A DNA stretch of 6,912 nucleotides from Ruditapes philippinarum (lineage: Eukaryota): NCBI RefSeq assembly GCF_026571515.1. It is one part of the record NW_026860139.1 of this genome. The stretch is one strand, 5' to 3'. The notes beneath the pieces are model-generated. The model ran no database searches. It had not been told where the DNA came from and saw nothing but the letters and a program-made list of their open reading frames with translations. The position numbers and the translations under genes were made by a program. Positions 1 to 6,912 of this stretch are shown here, one piece after another. Within the stretch, counting starts at the first letter, position 1; the number at the start of each line of letters is the position of its first letter.

Positions 1-1500
1 CTATTATTTTAATGAGTGTTGTGTTCTTTCCTTGTATGACCAGTTTTCAATAGATAGGCCTTTATTGAGAGGTTTTACACTATGTTATGCCTGATGAAGC
101 AGTCTTTAAACAGCGTAGTCGTAGCATTTAATGACCACTTGTTAATAAAGACCATATTTATATTTCCTAAAGAATGGTTTTTAATGAGAGGTTTTACAGT
201 AAAGCACGATCACAGTCTCTTTGAAACATTTAAAAGTGAATTGTGTTTTTCTTTTAACTATCTTTTACTGAATGTTGTGTTCTTTCATTAAATGACCACT
301 TGTCAATAGATTTCGTATTTCGCAATACCGGTCTTTATTGAGAGGTTATCCAGTATGTAATCCTTAAACAGCGTAATTTTAACAGTTGAATATATTTTTA
401 CATTATGTTTGTTTTTATCTTTTCATATTTGAAAAAAATGTGTGCTCTTTACATTATCACCATGTTTACAAAGACTGGCCTTTATTGACAGGTTATACAG
501 TATGTCATAATAATTGAGGTTTCTTCACAGCCATCTTATGGTTATATTTAATGTACAGTATGTATGCTTTAACTTCTTATGTTTGAATCTTGTCTTTTTA
601 TTAAATGATCACTTGTCAATAAAGGCCATATTTATATTTCCTATAGAATGGTCTTTACTAAGAGGTTTTATAGTAAAGTGCGATGACGGAGGACTCCTTA
701 AAACAGTCTCTTTGAAACATTTGAAAGTGAATTGTGTTTTTCTTTTAACTATCTTTTACTGAATGTTGTGTTCTTTCATTAAATGACCATGTGTCAATAG
801 ATTTCGTATTTTGCAACACCGGTTCTTTATTGAGAGGTTATCCAGTATGTAGTCCTTAAACAGCCTAATTGTAATAGTTGAATATATTTCTATATTATTT
901 TGTTTCCATCTTTTCATATTTGAAAAAAAATGTGTGATCTTTACAATACCACACTATGTTTACGAAGACTGGCCTTTATTGACAGGTTATACAGTATGTC
1001 ATAATAATAGAGGTTTCTTCACAGCCATCTGATAGTTAAATTTAATGTATAGTATTTATGCATTATCTGTTAATTTTTTAATCTTGTCTTATTATTAAAT
1101 GTCAATAAAGGCCATATTTATATTTCCTAAAGAATGGTTTTTACTGAGAGGTTTTACAGTATAGCACGATGACCCCTTAAACAGTCTCAATAAAACATTT
1201 AAAAGTGAATTATGTTTTTCTTTGACTGAATGTTATGTTCTTTCATTAAATGACCACTTGTCAATATATTTTGTATTTTGCAAGACCGGTCTTTATTGAG
1301 AGGTTATGCTGTATGTCATTCTTCCACAGATTCATTGTAGCATTTAAATATACTTTAATATACATTATGTTTGTTTTCATCTTTTCTTATTTGAAAAATG
1401 TGTGCTCTTTACATTATCACTTGCCAATACAGTCCATGTTTACCAAGACAGGTTATACAGTATGTCATAATATAAGAGGTTTCTTCAAAGCTATCGCATA
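1..1500. repeat. Internal diverged satellite block (~150-170-bp monomers in ~485-bp trimers), left-truncated by the window
   Basis: The motif GG(C/T)CTTTATTGA(G/C)AGGTT(A/T)TACAGTA recurs at about 57, 176, 330, 477, 650, 821, 971, 1136, 1288 and 1445. Every third monomer is most alike (176/650/1136; 330/821/1288; 477/971/1445). Confidence 0.92.
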
Positions 1501-1607
1501 AGTTCATATCTGTTTCAAACTAAATCGTTACACACTTTTGATATTTCTATTACACAGCTTAGCATTCTTAATTCTAATAAAGACCAACACCATCTATTTT
1601 TTTGTAT

Positions 1608-1613
1608 TTTATT
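1608..1613 (-). terminator. Polyadenylation signal AATAAA, gene copy 1
   Basis: First minus-strand AATAAA after the stop (~110 nt). It is followed ~17 nt later by a GU/U-rich element, GGTGTTGGTCTTT. Confidence 0.7.
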
Positions 1614-1723
1614 CATAATATTGTAATCAAATAACACATTTTAGCACAGCAGTAACAACAAGTTTACACAACAACAAAATAATATATGAAAAGCACTAAA
1701 AAGGCACATTGTATTCTGTATTA

Positions 1724-2578
1724 TCAATCACATCTGGACAACTCACAAACCACGCTGGTCCACACTCCGGCAGCCCTATCTTGGAACGTTTGCCCACTTG
1801 TTGCTGATGATGAAGTGTTAATATTCATCTGTACATTATCGTCTGCTTCTAAACTGGACTTGATCGCTGATGCTGTCTTTTGTACCTGAAATGATTAACA
1901 ATTGAATATAAAATGATTTATTCGAACGGTGAAATGATGAGGCTTTTATGTAATGCAGTTTTACATAACTATCTTATGTTATTTTTAAATAGGCAAAATA
2001 TAATAACGTTAGTACTGATAATTCGATCTGAAATTTATTAATAGTTGAATATGAACATATATGAAATCTGCTAACGAAAAACGACAAACGTAAGTACTAC
2101 AGGTATAGTTCTTTCGAATACTTTAAGCGTTATATCTGTTTAACATACCTCAGTCCATTTTCTGCTGGAATACTGCTTGTACATGTGACACACTCCTTCG
2201 TTGACAGACAAACGGAGAAGTAGACGAAGATGATGAGACTGTTTATCTTCTATGACTGACATCATACTCTGCTGGTCCACATTGGCTATAGCATTCTCTG
2301 AAAAAAAAGAATAAGAATAGAGTTTGAGAGCTGTTCTGCATTTATATGTAATGTAGTATATGCAATATTTAGCTTAATGTACAAGATGAAAATGAATATT
2401 TGTAGTTTCTTTCATTATTAATTCTAACAATTTTTAACTTCAGAACGCTTTATAATGATAAGAGCTACATGTAAATGTAATGAGTATTGTTCTTACCAAG
2501 TTGTGATACAGTCATATCACTGTTGTGAAGAGCCACCAACTTGTTGCGAAGACAACACGCTGCTGAGATAATGTCCAT
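1724..2578 (-). CDS. Spliced 3-exon gene, 130-aa hypothetical protein, copy 1: complement(join(1724..1885,2149..2297,2497..2578))
   Basis: ATG at 2578 has an in-frame TAA 3 codons upstream. Exon 1 is 82 nt with donor TTG/GTAAGA; intron 1 is 199 nt with acceptor TCTTTTTTTTCAG/ (phase 1). Exon 2 is 149 nt with donor GAG/GTATGT; intron 2 is 263 nt with acceptor CATTTCAG/ (phase 0). Exon 3 is 162 nt, ends in TGA and is followed directly by TAA. Phases are consistent and give a stop-free 393-nt ORF: MDIISAACCLRNKLVALHNSDMTVSQLENAIANVDQQSMMSVIEDKQSHHLRLLLRLSVNEGVCHMYKQYSSRKWTEVQKTASAIKSSLEADDNVQMNINTSSSATSGQTFQDRAAGVWTSVVCELSRCD. The exons coincide with the GC-richer islands of the unit. Confidence 0.88.
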
Positions 2579-2729
2579 GCTGATTTATTTGTAGGCAGAT
2601 GAAGTCTATTATATATTATAAGACTATGAATTTTGTGTATTAAGGTAATGACCTGGCTTGGTATAATTTTGCTCAGTGTATATTTTATGAGGTAAAAGGT
2701 TTTATGGCTTGGGTCTTGTGCCGTCTGGA

Positions 2730-2737
2730 TATTTATA
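2730..2737 (-). promoter_or_regulatory. TATA box (TATAAATA), gene copy 1
   Basis: Canonical TATAAATA on the minus strand ~150 nt upstream of the ATG. No other ATG lies between it and the ATG at 2578. Confidence 0.6.
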
Positions 2738-2859
2738 CTGCAATGGTCCATTGTTTTACAGTTTGCATTTTAATTGTTTCGTTAATTTACTTTAATAAGT
2801 TGAACACTGCTTATTGCAGAGAGATATTTTTCTTTTGATCACATGTACATAAAAGGAAG

Positions 2860-3030
2860 ATCAAACAAAGTTAATGGCCATTTAAAATCAATCATCATTT
2901 AATTGTTTGATAATTGGATTTTTATTAATAATAATTAAAGGCTTTAATTGCGTATTTCTAATTAATTAGTTAATCAGCAAAGTAATTAGTCGAATTAAAA
3001 CGATTACCAAAAATGATTGCTTAATTCAAA
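2860..3030. promoter_or_regulatory. Putative upstream enhancer with dense TAAT/ATTA homeodomain-type sites (copy at ~6264-6434)
   Basis: More than 10 TAAT/ATTA cores (TAATGG, TAATTG x3, TAATTA, TAATCA), including the perfect palindrome CTAATTAATTAG at 2958-2969. The AT-rich background lowers specificity. Confidence 0.3.
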
Positions 3031-3049
3031 TTTAAAATTATACTGAAAA

Positions 3050-3207
3050 CATATTCGTTGTTACTGCGTTTTGTTGCTTAAGTTTGTCTGCATTTATTGT
3101 GAACTCTTACTTTACAACCGGAACATAAATATTGTAAAATATTATTTTGTAAACCCCTTATGTATTTTATTAATACCTGGGTGAATAAAGATATTTGAAT
3201 TGAAGAA
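3050..3207 (+). mobile_element. Possible 3' end remnant of a non-LTR retrotransposon (CR1/L2-type tail); copy at ~6454-6614
   Basis: A T-rich, UTR-like stretch ends in AATAAA (3184-3189) followed by GATAT-TTGAA-TTGAA. No coding remnant or target-site duplication was found, and the 5' boundary is a guess. Confidence 0.3.
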
Positions 3208-3264
3208 TATTATGAATAACTAAATGCCAGTATTTCGAACAGTAGAACGAATTATAGTCCTCGG

Positions 3265-4905
3265 AAGACAATTTGTCAATAGAATCCATAATTATATTTC
3301 CTAAAAAATCGTTTTTATTGACAGGCTTTTACAGTACAGCTTGCTTAACGGGGGACGTCTTAAAACAGTTTCATTGAACTATTTGAATGTGAATTATATA
3401 TCTTTTAACTATTATTTTAATGAGTGTTGTATTCTTTCCTTGTATGACCAGTTTTCAATAGATAGGCCTTTATTGAGAGGTTATACACTATGTTATGCCT
3501 GATGAAGCAGTCTTTAAACAGCGTAGTCGTAGCATTTAATGACCACTTGTTAATAAAGACCATATTTATATTTCCTAAAGAATGGTTTTTAATGAGAGGT
3601 TTTACAGTAAAGCACGATCACAGTCTCTTTGAAACATTTAAAAGTGAATTGTGTTTTTCTTTTAACTATCTTTTACTGAATGTTGTGTTCTTTCATTAAA
3701 TGACCACTTGTCAATAGATTTCGTATTTCGCAATACCGGTCTTTATTGAGAGGTTATCCAGTATGTAATCCTTAAACAGCGTAATTTTAACAGTTGAATA
3801 TATTTTTACATTATGTTTGTTTTTATCTTTTCATATTTGAAAAAAATGTGTGCTCTTTACATTATCACCATGTTTACAAAGACTGGCCTTTATTGACAGG
3901 TTATACAGTATGTCATTATAATTGAGGTTTCTTCACAGCCATCTTATGGTTATATTTAATGTACAGTATGTATGCTTTAACTTCTTATGTTTGAATCTTG
4001 TCTTTTTATTAAATGACCACTTGTCAATAAAGGCCATATTTATATTTCCTATAGAATGGTCTTTACTAAGAGGTTTTATAGTAAAGTGCGATGACGGAGG
4101 ACTCCTTAAAACAGTCTCTTTGAAACATTTGAAAGTGAATTGTGTTTTTCTTTTAACTATCTTTTACTGAATGTTGTGTTCTTTCATTAAATGACCACTT
4201 GTCAATAGATTTCGTATTTTGCAACACCGGTTCTTTATTGAGAGGTTATCCAGTATGTAGTCCTTAAACAGCCTAATTGTAATAGTTGAATATATTTCTA
4301 TATTATTTTGTTTCCATCTTTTCATATTTGAAAAAAATGTGTGATCTTTACAATATCACTATGTTTACGAAGACTGGCCTTTATTGACAGGTTATACAGT
4401 ATGTCATAATAATAGAGGTTTCTTCACAGCCATCTGATAGTTAAATTTAATGTATAGTATTTATGCATTATCTGTTAATTTTTTAATCTTGTCTTATTAT
4501 TAAATGTCAATAAAGGCCATATTTATATTTCCTAAAGAATGGTTTTTACTGAGAGGTTTTACAGTATAGCACGATGACCCCTTAAACAGTCTCAATAAAA
4601 CATTTAAAAGTGAATTATGTTTTTCTTTGACTGAATGTTATGTTCTTTCATTAAATGACCACTTGTCAATATATTTTGTATTTTGCAAGACCGGTCTTTA
4701 TTGAGAGGTTATGCTGTATGTCATTCTTCCACAGATTCATTGTAGCATTTAAATATACTTTAATATACATTATGTTTGTTTTCATCTTTTCTTATTTGAA
4801 AAATGTGTGCTCTTTACATTATCACTTGCCAATACAGTCCATGTTTACCAAGACAGGTTATACAGTATGTCATAATATAAGAGGTTTCTTCAAAGCTATC
4901 GCATA
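3265..4905. repeat. Complete internal satellite block (~11 monomers, ~1.64 kb) between gene copies
   Basis: Starts with a diverged monomer (GACAATTTGTCAATAG...TTTTTATTGACAGGCTTTTACAGTA) and continues as the copy of 1-1500. Boundaries are approximate. Confidence 0.9.
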
Positions 4906-5012
4906 AGTTCATATCTGTTTCAAACTAAATCGTTACACACTTTTGATATTTCTATTACACAGCTTAGCATTCTTAATTCTAATAAAGACCAACACCATCT
5001 ATTTTTTTGTAT

Positions 5013-5018
5013 TTTATT
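5013..5018 (-). terminator. Polyadenylation signal AATAAA, gene copy 2
   Basis: Identical context to 1608-1613. Confidence 0.7.
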
Positions 5019-5128
5019 CATAATATTGTAATCAAATAACACATTTTAGCACAGCAGTAACAACAAGTTTACACAACAACAAAATAATATATGAAAAGCA
5101 CTAAAAAGGCACATTGTATTCTGTATTA

Positions 5129-5982
5129 TCAATCACATCTGGACAACTCACAAACCACGCTGGTCCACACTCCGGCAGCCCTATCTTGGAACGTTTGCCC
5201 ACTTGTTGCTGATGATGAAGTGTTAATATTCATCTGTACATTATCGTCTGCTTCTAAACTGGACTTGATCGCTGATGCTGTCTTTTGTACCTGAAATGAT
5301 TAACAATTGAATATAAAATGATTTATTCGAACGGTGAAATGATGAGGCTTTTATGTAATGCAGTTTTACATAACTATCTAATGTTATTTTTAAATAGGCA
5401 AAATATAATTAAGTTAGTACTGATAATTCGATCTGAAATTTATTAATAGTTGAATATGAACATATATGAAATCTGCTAACGAAAAACGACAAACGTAAGT
5501 ACTACAGGTATAGTTCTTTCGAATACTTTAAGCGTTATATCTGTTTAACATACCTCAGTCCATTTTCTGCTGGAATACTGCTTGTACATGTGACACACTC
5601 CTTCGTTGACAGACAAACGGAGAAGTAGACGAAGATGATGAGACTGTTTATCTTCTATGACTGACATCATACTCTGCTGGTCCACATTGGCTATAGCATT
5701 CTCTGAAAAAAAGAATAAGAATAGAGTTTGAGAGCTGTTCTGCATTTATATGTAATGTAGTATATGCAATATTTAGCTTAATGTACAAGATGAAAATGAA
5801 TATTTGTAGTTTCTTTCATTATTAATTCTAACAATTTTTAACTTCAGAACGCTTTATAATGATAAGAGCTACATGTAAATGTAATGAGTATTGTTCTTAC
5901 CAAGTTGTGATACAGTCATATCACTGTTGTGAAGAGCCACCAACTTGTTGCGAAGACAACACGCTGCTGAGATAATGTCCAT
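5129..5982 (-). CDS. Spliced 3-exon gene, 130-aa hypothetical protein, copy 2: complement(join(5129..5290,5554..5702,5901..5982))
   Basis: Exons and splice dinucleotides are identical to copy 1; introns are 198 and 263 nt. ORF-track entry 5545..5745 contains exon 2 in the same frame. Confidence 0.88.
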
Positions 5983-6133
5983 GCTGATTTATTTGTAGGC
6001 AGATGAAGTCTATTATATATTATAAGACTATGAATTTTGTGTATTAAGGTAATGACCTGGCTTGGTATAATTTTGCTCAGTGTATATTTTATGAGGTAAA
6101 AGGTTTTATGGCTTGGGTCTTGTGCCGTCTGGA

Positions 6134-6141
6134 TATTTATA
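6134..6141 (-). promoter_or_regulatory. TATA box (TATAAATA), gene copy 2
   Basis: Identical to 2730-2737. Confidence 0.6.
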
Positions 6142-6671
6142 CTGCAATGGTCCATTGTTTTACAGTTTGCATTTTAATTGTTTCGTTAATTTACTTTAAT
6201 AAGTTGAACACTGCTTATTGCAGAGAGATATTTTTCTTTTGATCACATGTACATAAAAGGAAGATCAAACAAAGTTAATGGCCATTTAAAATCAATCATC
6301 ATTTAATTGTTTGATAATTGGATTTTTATTAATAATAATTAAAGGCTTTAATTGCGTATTTCTAATTAATTAGTTAATCAGCAAAGTAATTAGTCGAATT
6401 AAAACGATTACCAAAAATGATTGCTTAATTCAAATTTAAAATTATACTGAAAACATATTCGTTGTTACTGCGTTTTGTTGCTTAAGTTTATCTGCATTTA
6501 TTGTGAACTCTTACTTTACAACCGGAACATAAATATTGTAAAATATTATTTTGTAAACCCTTATGTATTTTATTAATACCTGGGTGAATAAAGATATTTG
6601 AATTGAAGAAAGAATATTATGAATAACTAAATGCCAGTATTTCGAACAGTAGAACGAATTATAGTCCTCGG

Positions 6672-6912
6672 AAGACAATTTGTCAATAGAATCCATAATT
6701 ATATTTCCTAAAATATCGTTTTTATTGGCAGGCTTTTACAGTACAGCTTGCTTAACGGGGGACGTCTTAAAACAGTTTCATTGAACTATTTGAATGTGAA
6801 TTATATATCTTTTAACTATTATTTTAATGAGTGTTGTATTCTTTCCTTGTATGACCAGTTTTCAATAGATAGGCCTTTATTGAGAGGTTATACACTATGT
6901 TATGCCTGATGA
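6672..6912. repeat. Start of next internal satellite block (truncated)
   Basis: Copy of 3265-3505. Confidence 0.9.
6816..6912. repeat. Start of third tandem unit (truncated by window end)
   Basis: Matches 3409-3505, including the copy-2 alleles at unit positions 23 (A) and 75 (A). Confidence 0.97.

What the first reader, a model, noticed from the sequence alone, without database searches (positions are those of the whole stretch)
1..6912. Gene-bearing 3.4-kb macrosatellite: every unit carries an intact, intron-containing orphan gene
Seen: at least 2 full head-to-tail units at ~99.4% identity, each with TATA box, 3 exons, poly(A) signal and a satellite spacer. Known: highly homogenised tandem gene arrays include rDNA, histone and snRNA genes, and dosage- or conflict-related arrays such as D4Z4/DUX4, Stellate and TSPY. 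I do not recognise this unit as any of those. Inference: this is an undescribed amplified gene array under concerted evolution or very recent expansion, possibly with a burst-expressed germline or early-embryo product. Retained introns point to DNA-level amplification rather than retroposition.
Basis: partly seen in the sequence, partly recalled or inferred. Interest (0 to 1): 0.85.

Follow-up and report, generated by a model that had tools for sequence, protein, structure and literature searches.

The report
Tandem clam gene array, uncharacterised helical protein
The window is part of a real head-to-tail array of 3.4-kb units in the Manila clam genome; each unit carries a complete three-exon gene for a small helical protein of unknown function, from a family found only in heterodont bivalves and already listed in RefSeq as "uncharacterized", so it is a tidy but fairly ordinary recent gene amplification.

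Summary
The window holds two full 3405-3408-bp units at 99.36% identity and the start of a third. Its contig (C8626, 206,770 bp) carries six gene-bearing units plus partial ones over about 29 kb.

Each unit has two parts:
- a block of about 1.5 kb made of roughly 160-bp sub-repeats, organised as three copies of about 480-490 bp and nearly confined to this array;
- a three-exon, GT-AG gene on the minus strand encoding 130 aa.

The gene is real:
- At least four intact paralogs and one frameshifted copy elsewhere in the genome share its start codon, intron positions and stop position (one more distant relative has exons 2 and 3 fused).
- dN/dS against the paralogs is 0.21-0.28.
- The three exon translations lie in order in RefSeq protein XP_060606720 (LOC132759013/16, Ruditapes philippinarum).

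It is not an orphan. Relatives occur in Mercenaria, Mya, Mactra and Dreissena, and consecutive locus tags suggest a cluster in Dreissena too. There is no Pfam domain and no relative with a solved structure. AlphaFold2 gives one long helix, a disordered Ser/Thr-rich linker and a short conserved C-terminal helix.

The true copy number, the exon 1-exon 2 junction in RNA, and the tissue or stage of expression are not settled. Verdict: a new member of a known kind (recent DNA-level tandem gene amplification), of modest interest.

The parts
1..3408 (.). Array unit 1 (3408 bp)
   Evidence: Aligns to 3409-6815 at 99.355% identity. The same unit occurs six times, plus partial copies, on contig C8626.
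3409..6815 (.). Array unit 2 (3407 bp)
   Evidence: In the 1500-3100 stretch laid, its variants at 1975, 2005, 2007 and 2301 are the ones carried by the deep DNA contig of run X4.
6816..6912 (.). First 97 bp of unit 3
   Evidence: 97.9% identical to window 1-97. The contig continues with a further unit at 187904-191313.
1..1500 (+). Internal repeat block of unit 1: about ten ~160-bp sub-repeats organised as three copies of about 480-490 bp. The block already begins near 3250 of the preceding unit.
   Evidence: Repeat families D1-D4, D9 and D10. Internal BLAST hits at 81-84% identity. Core motif found 19 times against 0.01 expected. In the genome it is found only on C8626, on the noisy contig C6218 and as a fragment on C6867.
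3409..4905 (+). Internal repeat block of unit 2
2497..2578 (-). Gene copy 1, exon 1 (ATG at 2578; 27 codons plus 1 nt; donor GTAAGA)
   Evidence: The 27-aa translation is residues 1-27 of RefSeq protein P0056. Paralogs keep the same ATG and donor position. The join to exon 2 was not seen in RNA here.
2149..2297 (-). Gene copy 1, exon 2 (149 nt, phase 1; acceptor TTTCAG, donor GTATGT); holds the most conserved motif of the family
   Evidence: RNA contigs of runs X15 and X19 lie on it. A profile of this exon finds 34 proteins.
1724..1885 (-). Gene copy 1, exon 3 (CDS to TGA at 1726-1724)
   Evidence: The X15 RNA contig joins 1885 to 2149 and skips 263 nt with CT..AC ends, which is GT..AG on the minus strand.
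5901..5982 (-). Gene copy 2, exon 1
   Evidence: 100% identical to copy 1.
5554..5702 (-). Gene copy 2, exon 2
   Evidence: 100% identical to copy 1.
5129..5290 (-). Gene copy 2, exon 3
   Evidence: 100% identical to copy 1.
2608..2621 (-). TATA-like A/T run 30-43 nt upstream of the ATG (candidate core promoter, unverified)
   Evidence: Read directly from the sequence. No RNA 5' end is available. Paralogs have no equivalent at this place.
1608..1613 (-). AATAAA on the minus strand, 111 nt after the stop codon (candidate poly(A) signal, unverified)
   Evidence: Read directly from the sequence. The RNA contig stops at 1721, so the 3' UTR is not covered.
3109..3204 (+). 96-bp fragment of a dispersed short element in the spacer, repeated again at about 6513-6608
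   Evidence: 92-99% matches on more than 30 other contigs. Elsewhere the shared element is about 200 bp long.

Best explanation
This is a recent DNA-level tandem amplification in the Manila clam (Ruditapes philippinarum). The amplified 3.4-kb segment contains one complete gene (candidate promoter region, three exons, two introns, candidate 3' end) and a block of about 1.5 kb of internal repeats.

The gene encodes a 130-aa non-secreted protein. The model gives one long alpha-helix (residues 3-95), a disordered Ser/Thr-rich linker and a short conserved C-terminal helix. The protein belongs to a family without a Pfam domain, found so far only in heterodont bivalves.

Shown:
- the array itself;
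- the exon structure;
- one splice junction in RNA;
- purifying selection across the family;
- agreement of all three exon translations with the RefSeq models on this contig.

Inferred:
- The units arose and are kept alike by unequal crossing-over or gene conversion. The internal 480-bp repeats probably help, since units differ in how many of these monomers they carry.
- The effect of the amplification is a higher dose of this small helical protein, which most likely acts by binding a partner through its long helix and its conserved C-terminal motif.

The protein's cellular role is unknown.
For: Array:
- Two units at 99.36% identity.
- Six gene-bearing units plus partial units on C8626:169670-199000, 98.8-99.8% identical to each other in the gene part.
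- Units differ in the number of 480-bp monomers; for example there are extra monomers at 192071-193829.
- Runs from several independent studies hold 90-94% of the sampled words. A DNA contig of run X4 covers the whole laid stretch at k-mer depth 1070.6, against 19.5 for another contig in the same run; this comparison is uncalibrated.

Gene:
- GT-AG introns with phases 1 and 0 in all six copies; five of six reading frames are intact.
- The RNA contig of run X15 joins 1885 to 2149 with no mismatch over 317 nt.
- Paralogs on C3710 (two), C13450, C13826 and C15185 keep the ATG, the intron positions and the stop position (C15185 has a 1-bp frameshift in exon 2).
- NG86 dN/dS of the array gene against the paralogs is 0.21-0.28 at dS 1.2-1.7, and 0.23-0.46 among the paralogs.
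- A distant paralog on C12470 has exons 2 and 3 fused, and the similarity runs straight across the junction.
- The exon translations occupy residues 1-27, 29-77 and 78-130 of RefSeq XP_060606720/21/23, whose contig length of 206,770 equals that of C8626.

Family:
- Relatives are named from Mercenaria mercenaria, Mya arenaria, Mactra antiquata and Dreissena polymorpha. In Dreissena the locus tags DPMN_083419-083426 are consecutive on one chromosome.

Protein:
- Two AlphaFold2 models, of the Mercenaria relative P0004 (65% identical) and of the window's own protein, both give helix 3-95 with pLDDT above 90, a disordered stretch at 96-113, and helix 114-128.
Against: - The exon 1-exon 2 junction was not seen in RNA. 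Upstream of exon 2 the X15 contig continues with 50 nt that are neither exon 1 nor anywhere in this assembly.
- One RNA library (X16) holds only intron and spacer pieces, which suggests carried-over DNA or unspliced RNA.
- One array copy has a frameshift in exon 1.
- Within the array, exons do not vary significantly less than the rest by substitutions (4/393 against 28/1427, p = 0.28). Selection on the amplified copies themselves is therefore not shown.
- The contig is visibly faulty inside the array: 5.2 kb of A/T noise including a poly-A run of more than 2.5 kb at 175896-181088. The assembled copy number is therefore unreliable.
- The helix shows no significant heptad pattern, and the self-pairing test gave no verdict. 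The binding mode is a guess.
Confidence: 0.75

Rival explanations
1. Neutral, very young segmental duplication. The array is a by-product of unequal exchange at a repeat-rich spot. Extra copies bring no benefit and are starting to decay, and only the family as a whole, not the amplified copies, is under selection.
For: - No significant deficit of substitutions in exons within the array.
- One copy is frameshifted and three copies carry amino-acid changes (A16V, C9F, K46N) against one synonymous change.
- Tandem duplication is very common in bivalve genomes (PMC6835236, listed; abstract only read).
Against: - Five of six reading frames are intact, and all splice signals are intact in all six copies.
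- The transcript matches the array copies with no mismatch.
- The family seems to sit in tandem clusters in Dreissena too, which hints at repeated retention.
- The frameshift may be an assembly error on a contig with obvious errors.
Confidence: 0.3
2. Conflict- or germline-type amplified array. This would be a copy-number-variable array of tens of copies, expressed in a burst in gonad or early embryo, comparable to D4Z4/DUX4, TSPY or Stellate.
For: - High identity between units.
- The uncalibrated k-mer depth in run X4 (1070.6 against 19.5) allows far more copies than the six assembled.
- Relatives are also clustered in Dreissena.
Against: - No tissue or stage information could be obtained: all runs are Logan contigs without depth, and their sample descriptions are coded.
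- No sex-linkage information.
- The neighbouring gene is an ordinary housekeeping gene, INTS15.
- The protein has no DNA-binding or other recognisable domain.
Confidence: 0.1
3. Assembly artefact. One or two real copies were inflated into an array by noisy long reads.
For: - The contig contains 5.2 kb of A/T homopolymer noise with a poly-A run of more than 2.5 kb inside the array.
- Contig C6218 is an 84% copy riddled with homopolymer-type indels, as expected of unpolished sequence.
Against: - The units differ by discrete substitutions and by whole-monomer differences, not by random noise.
- The window's two units differ at 1975, 2005, 2007 and 2301, and an independent 2016 DNA run carries the unit-2 variants at those four sites on a contig of very high k-mer depth.
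- Several studies hold the sequence.
Confidence: 0.05

Closest known systems
Gene-bearing macrosatellites and tandem gene arrays (human D4Z4/DUX4, TSPY, CT47, TAF11-like; review PMC5687341)
   Same: - Unit of about 3 kb repeated head to tail at very high identity.
- A complete gene in each unit.
- Homogenisation best explained by unequal exchange or gene conversion.
   Different: - Only six units are assembled, and copy-number variation is not shown.
- The gene keeps its introns, whereas DUX4 is an intronless retrogene.
- The protein is a small helical protein without a known domain.
- No link to heterochromatin, a sex chromosome or germline expression was found.
Lineage-specific tandem gene expansions in bivalves (for example C1qDC genes, PMC6835236)
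   Same: Local tandem duplication of a gene from a family expanded in bivalves, with several paralogs elsewhere in the same genome.
   Different: - The copies here are nearly identical and regularly spaced, like a satellite, rather than a cluster of diverged paralogs.
- The family is small, intracellular by prediction, and has no known function.
RefSeq models LOC132759011/12/13/16 (Ruditapes philippinarum) and LOC123557613/LOC123562900 (Mercenaria mercenaria), all 'uncharacterized protein'
   Same: - The window's three exon translations lie in order at residues 1-27, 29-77 and 78-130 of XP_060606720/21/23 (P0056).
- The Mercenaria proteins have the same length (129-130 aa) and are 64-65% identical over the whole length.
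   Different: These are automatic annotations only. No study, name, domain or function is attached, and the array arrangement is not pointed out anywhere I could find.
Bivalve satellite DNAs and repeat-carrying mobile elements (pearl/DTC84-type; PMC5139131, PMC8268682)
   Same: Sub-repeats of about 160 bp in short arrays embedded in gene-rich DNA.
   Different: - The repeat here is almost confined to this one array.
- No mobile-element ends or transposase were found in the unit.
- Sequence relatedness to the named satellites was not tested, because no reference sequences were on hand.

Membership tests
Gene-bearing macrosatellite / homogenised tandem gene array | Unit of one to several kb repeated head to tail | tested here: met
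   Units of 3405-3408 bp. There are two in the window and six gene-bearing units plus partial ones on the contig.
Gene-bearing macrosatellite / homogenised tandem gene array | Very high identity between units | tested here: met
   99.36% over whole units in the window. Whole-unit identity to unit 1 along the contig is 97.2-99.4%. Identity over the gene part is 98.8-99.8%.
Gene-bearing macrosatellite / homogenised tandem gene array | A complete gene or reading frame in each unit | tested here: met
   All six copies have the three exons and intact GT-AG signals. Five of six reading frames are intact and one has a 1-bp deletion.
Gene-bearing macrosatellite / homogenised tandem gene array | Tens to hundreds of copies, variable between individuals | tested here: inconclusive
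   Only six copies are assembled, on a faulty contig. The k-mer depth of one X4 contig is 1070.6 against 19.5 for another, but this is uncalibrated. No raw reads were on offer.
Gene-bearing macrosatellite / homogenised tandem gene array | Transcription of the unit's gene | tested here: met
   The spliced RNA contig of X15 joins exon 3 to exon 2 with no mismatch, and the X19 contig lies on exon 2. Expression level, tissue and the exon 1 junction are not shown.
rDNA, 5S, histone, snRNA or tRNA arrays | Unit contains the corresponding RNA or histone gene | tested here: not met
   No Rfam match at E up to 1 on either strand. No Pfam match for any exon or for the whole protein.
Retroposed (processed) gene array | Intronless copies with a poly(A) remnant | tested here: not met
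   Both introns are present in every unit. The DNA contig of X4 covers the introns, and no joined form was seen in DNA.
Genome-wide satellite DNA | Monomer abundant at many loci | tested here: not met
   The 480-bp block matches only C8626, C6218 and a fragment on C6867. Caveat: the search skips very common words.
Heterodont-bivalve family of LOC132759013-like small helical proteins (no Pfam entry) | Conserved core motif in exon 2 and early exon 3, and a C-terminal motif with invariant-like W and R near the end | tested here: met
   Alignment A6 of 21 members has L55, R56, S58 and G62 invariant, and V59, E61, V63, M66, Y70, K74, V78, Q79, W119 and R128 at 90% or more. The exon 2 profile finds 34 proteins, the best at E = 4e-32.
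Heterodont-bivalve family of LOC132759013-like small helical proteins (no Pfam entry) | Three coding exons with introns in phases 1 and 0 at the same places | tested here: met
   The same ATG, donors, acceptors and stop position are found in five paralogous loci of the same genome. One distant member (C12470) has exons 2 and 3 fused.
Canonical coiled-coil protein | Heptad periodicity of hydrophobic residues along the helix | tested here: not met
   The best single-register a/d occupancy equals that of shuffled sequence (10 against a mean of 10.5, P = 0.83). AlphaFold2 nevertheless gives one uninterrupted helix at 3-95.

The most novel reading that the evidence does not exclude
The family may be prone to repeated, independent amplification into near-identical tandem arrays in different heterodont bivalves (Ruditapes here; Dreissena by its consecutive locus tags and duplicated modules). 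The clam array may in truth hold tens of copies that vary between individuals. That would make it a dosage- or conflict-driven expressed macrosatellite gene of unknown function, an invertebrate counterpart of TSPY- or DUX4-type arrays.
Probability: 0.15. Interest if true: 0.6.

Novelty: new member of a known kind. Interest (0 to 1): 0.35.

Why it matters
It gives a clean, small example of a satellite-like array in an invertebrate whose unit is a whole, spliced, conserved gene. The candidate promoter region, the introns and the repeats that probably drive unequal exchange all fit in 3.4 kb.

It also singles out an unstudied protein family restricted to heterodont bivalves, which appears to sit in tandem clusters in more than one species.

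If copy number proves high and variable, the locus could serve as a marker and as a model for dosage evolution in clams. As it stands, it is an annotated but unstudied gene cluster of a common evolutionary kind.

Tried and rejected
- Rfam on the whole window at E up to 1: nothing.
- Pfam on each exon, on database relatives and on all 21 family members: only sub-threshold chance hits.
- Profile search against PDB sequences: nothing below E = 0.5.
- ESM Atlas: no feature hit. The structure neighbours are generic TPR or helical proteins at TM below 0.5, which is uninformative.
- The search for homologous proteins with the long exon of the distant paralog on C12470: nothing.
- Death-fold (CARD/PYD-like) idea from the helix pattern: dropped, because both AlphaFold2 models give a single long helix and no bundle.
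- Fold search was not run. A lone helix matches any helical protein, so the result would be meaningless.
- Self-pairing of the Mercenaria relative (complex prediction, two copies): no verdict, score 0.00. This is no evidence either way.
- The 30 printed letters of the 50-nt unexplained 5' part of the X15 RNA contig are absent from the assembly at up to 2 mismatches and from all fetched loci.
- Whether the array lies inside an ANKRD16-like gene, as a Mya arenaria model (P0021) suggests: no. The ANKRD16-like exons are on other contigs (C5321, C9250).
- C6218 as an old diverged copy for dating: rejected. Its differences are spread evenly over exons and introns and look like homopolymer sequencing errors.
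- Paper searches for the LOC numbers found nothing.

How the spliced model was handled: it was searched exon by exon by reference only. The full-length proteins used (P0004, P0038, P0056) were returned by the database tools.

Full report
**1. Observation**

The window (6912 bp, 30% G+C, no N) holds two complete head-to-tail units, 1-3408 and 3409-6815. They align end to end at 99.355% identity, with 13 mismatches and 5 gap openings. The last 97 bases start a third unit. No difference between the two units falls in an exon.

The window is G000:C8626:181089-188000, in a genome of 1.408 Gb and 15,874 contigs. On this 206,770-bp contig the unit recurs from about 169,670 to 199,000. There are six copies of the gene-bearing part, plus partial units and stretches with extra 480-bp monomers. 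Over the 1.8-kb gene part, the copies are 98.8-99.8% identical to each other.

**2. Anatomy of the unit**

(a) Repeat block. About 1.5 kb (window 1-1500, already beginning near 3250 of the preceding unit) is made of diverged sub-repeats of roughly 160 bp.
- A 21-nt core motif occurs 19 times in the window, always on the + strand, against 0.01 expected by chance.
- The sub-repeats are grouped as three copies of about 480-490 bp at 81-84% identity.
- The block is almost private to this array. In the whole genome it matches only C8626, the noisy contig C6218 and a fragment on C6867.

(b) Gene and spacer. The remaining 1.9 kb carries a gene on the minus strand:
- exon 1, 2578-2497, with ATG at 2578;
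- exon 2, 2297-2149;
- exon 3, 1885-1724, with TGA at 1726-1724.

The introns are GT..AG in phases 1 and 0. A TATA-like run (2621-2608) and an AATAAA (1613-1608) are present on the minus strand, but neither is verified.

The spacer also holds a 96-bp piece of a dispersed short element (3109-3204) that occurs on dozens of other contigs. Rfam finds nothing in the window.

**3. Is the gene real?**

Four lines of evidence say yes.

- *RNA.* A contig from an RNA-Seq run labelled 'mollusc metagenome' (X15) lies on 1721-1885 and 2149-2300 with no mismatch. It skips 263 nt with CT..AC ends, which is GT..AG on the gene's strand. That is intron 2 exactly. A DNA run laid beside it shows no such joined form. 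A second RNA study (X19) covers exon 2.
- *Paralogs.* Searching each exon as protein against the same genome finds collinear copies on C3710 (two), C13450, C13826 and C15185. They are 54-65% identical at the protein level and share the same ATG, donors, acceptors and stop position. C15185 has a 1-bp frameshift in exon 2.
- *Selection.* Nei-Gojobori counts were made exon by exon and summed as numbers. They give dN/dS of 0.21-0.28 between the array gene and the paralogs (dS 1.2-1.7), and 0.23-0.46 among the paralogs. A more distant relative on C12470 has exons 2 and 3 in one exon, and the similarity runs straight across the junction.
- *Database.* A profile of exon 2 searched against 1.84 billion proteins found 34 relatives. 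A further search returned RefSeq proteins of Ruditapes philippinarum that lie on a contig of 206,770 bp, the length of C8626. These are LOC132759011, 12, 13 and 16. The window's three exon translations occupy residues 1-27, 29-77 and 78-130 of P0056 (XP_060606720/21/23). P0038 (LOC132759012) carries the C9F change of the copy at 174 kb.

This fixes the organism as the Manila clam, as earlier notes of this scan had said.

I searched the spliced model exon by exon by reference and did not join the exons myself. The full-length proteins used later were returned by the tools.

**4. What is not shown about the gene**

- The exon 1-exon 2 junction was not seen in RNA. Upstream of exon 2 the X15 contig continues with 50 nt that are not exon 1 and are absent from the assembly. 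This could be an alternative 5' exon, a copy not assembled, or a chimeric contig.
- Indirect support for the three-exon reading comes from the RefSeq models, from the 130-aa Mercenaria relative, and from a 134-aa full-length relative found on a 922-nt Logan contig (P0040). A contig that short cannot hold the introns and so is probably mRNA.
- One RNA library (X16, 'fish metagenome') holds only intron and spacer pieces, most simply clam DNA or unspliced RNA in the sample.
- One array copy (189-190 kb) has a 1-bp deletion in exon 1.
- Within the array, exons do not carry significantly fewer substitutions than the rest (4/393 against 28/1427, p = 0.28). The six copies are too alike to test selection on them.

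**5. How reliable is the array?**

The contig is faulty inside the array. C8626:175896-181088 is A/T homopolymer noise followed by more than 2.5 kb of poly-A. Contig C6218 is an 84% copy full of homopolymer-type indels, spread evenly over exons and introns, as expected of unpolished sequence. The assembled count of six is therefore not trustworthy.

The array as such is nevertheless well supported:
- Units differ by discrete substitutions and by whole monomers.
- The sequence is held by runs of several studies, including a marine sediment metagenome.
- In an independent 2016 DNA run, the contig covering the stretch carries the unit-2 variants at 1975, 2005, 2007 and 2301. Its k-mer depth is 1070.6, against 19.5 for another contig laid beside it. 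That comparison is uncalibrated and is not a copy number, but it allows many more copies than six.

**6. The protein and its family**

- No Pfam domain, no relative in the PDB by sequence, and no useful Atlas neighbour.
- AlphaFold2 on the Mercenaria relative (8-row alignment) and on the window's own protein (21 rows) gives the same picture: one helix from 3 to 95 at pLDDT above 90, a disordered Ser/Thr-rich stretch at 96-113, and a short helix at 114-128 of low confidence.
- The most conserved parts are a core of about 40 residues spanning the end of exon 2 and the start of exon 3, and the C-terminal helix with near-invariant W119 and R128.
- The helix has no significant heptad pattern, and the self-pairing test gave no verdict.
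- Named relatives come from Mercenaria mercenaria (at least five loci), Mya arenaria, Mactra antiquata and Dreissena polymorpha.
- In Dreissena, the locus tags DPMN_083419-083426 are consecutive on one chromosome, and some models contain two nearly identical exon 2-exon 3 modules.
- A tree of the family is poorly resolved inside the venerid clade. The C3710-type paralog groups with a Mercenaria gene at 90/86 support, which suggests that the split from the array-type gene is older than the two clam species.

**7. Context**

An exon of INTS15 (Integrator subunit 15, E = 2e-25) lies at C8626:164448-164996, about 5 kb from the left edge of the array. The array therefore sits in ordinary gene-bearing DNA. 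The ankyrin protein fused to a family member in a Mya gene model has its clam counterpart on other contigs.

**8. Explanation and rivals**

The best reading is a recent DNA-level tandem amplification of a whole small gene. It was homogenised or simply kept young by unequal exchange, helped by the internal 480-bp repeats, whose number differs between units. The effect is a higher dose of a small helical protein that probably works by binding a partner. The structure and the gene are shown; the mechanism of homogenisation, the dosage effect and the binding are inferred.

Rivals:
- a neutral young duplication on its way to decay (0.3; not exclusive of the main reading);
- an assembly artefact (0.05).

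**9. Comparison and verdict**

The locus works like a gene-bearing macrosatellite (D4Z4/DUX4, TSPY, CT47; PMC5687341). It meets the tests for unit size, identity between units, a gene in each unit and transcription. High and variable copy number is not shown.

It is equally a case of the tandem gene expansions common in bivalves (PMC6835236). It is not rDNA, histone or snRNA, not a retrogene array, and its repeat is not a genome-wide satellite.

The gene is not an orphan and is already in RefSeq as 'uncharacterized protein'. No paper mentioning the related Mercenaria loci was found.

Novelty: a new member of a known kind. Interest is modest.

Noticed in passing
G000:C8626:175896-181088 (L014 about 5900-10000 and the start of L015): Inside the array, the contig holds 5.2 kb of A/T homopolymer noise ending in a poly-A run of more than 2.5 kb. 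This is almost certainly an assembly or read artefact, not biology.
   Followed up: partly
L007 (G000:C6218:192-2978): A separate contig carries an 84% copy of the unit. Its differences are mostly duplicated or lost bases in short runs, spread evenly over exons and introns. It looks like an unpolished extra piece of the same array.
   Followed up: partly
window 3109-3204 and about 6513-6608; L009, L010: A 96-bp piece of a short dispersed element, about 200 bp long elsewhere and ending in an AATAAA-containing tail, sits in the spacer. It matches more than 30 other contigs at 92-99%.
   Followed up: partly
L029:1228-1650 (-), G000:C12470:273321-273743: A distant relative of the family has exons 2 and 3 fused in one exon of 141 codons, with a long acidic, proline-rich C-terminal extension. 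A likely first exon lies about 600 bp upstream. No database relative was found.
   Followed up: partly
L013:4448-4996 (+), G000:C8626:164448-164996: An exon of Integrator complex subunit 15 (Pfam INTS15, E = 2.3e-25, profile positions 193-349 of 362) lies about 5 kb from the left edge of the array. It would serve as a single-copy depth control and a synteny anchor.
   Followed up: no
Read laying on window 1500-3100, run X15, beyond position 2300: Upstream of exon 2, the spliced RNA contig continues with 50 nt that are not exon 1. Its 30 printed letters are not in this assembly at up to 2 mismatches. It may be an alternative 5' exon from an unassembled copy, or a chimeric contig.
   Followed up: partly
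P0021 (Mya arenaria WAR26210.1, 'ANR16-like protein'): This gene model places a member of the family between ankyrin repeats. It is probably a nested gene merged into its host by the annotation. In the clam, the ANKRD16-like exons lie on other contigs (C5321, C9250).
   Followed up: partly
G000:C15185:44247-45701 (-) versus G000:C13826:680-2096 (+): Two nearly identical paralog loci sit on different contigs. The C15185 copy has a 1-bp deletion in exon 2. They may be alleles split by the assembler, or a very recent duplicate with one broken copy.
   Followed up: no
runs X1 and X16/X18: A marine sediment metagenome holds 94% of the sampled words of this clam locus, and 'fish metagenome' RNA libraries hold intron and spacer pieces. 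Clam DNA is evidently present in environmental and gut samples.
   Followed up: no
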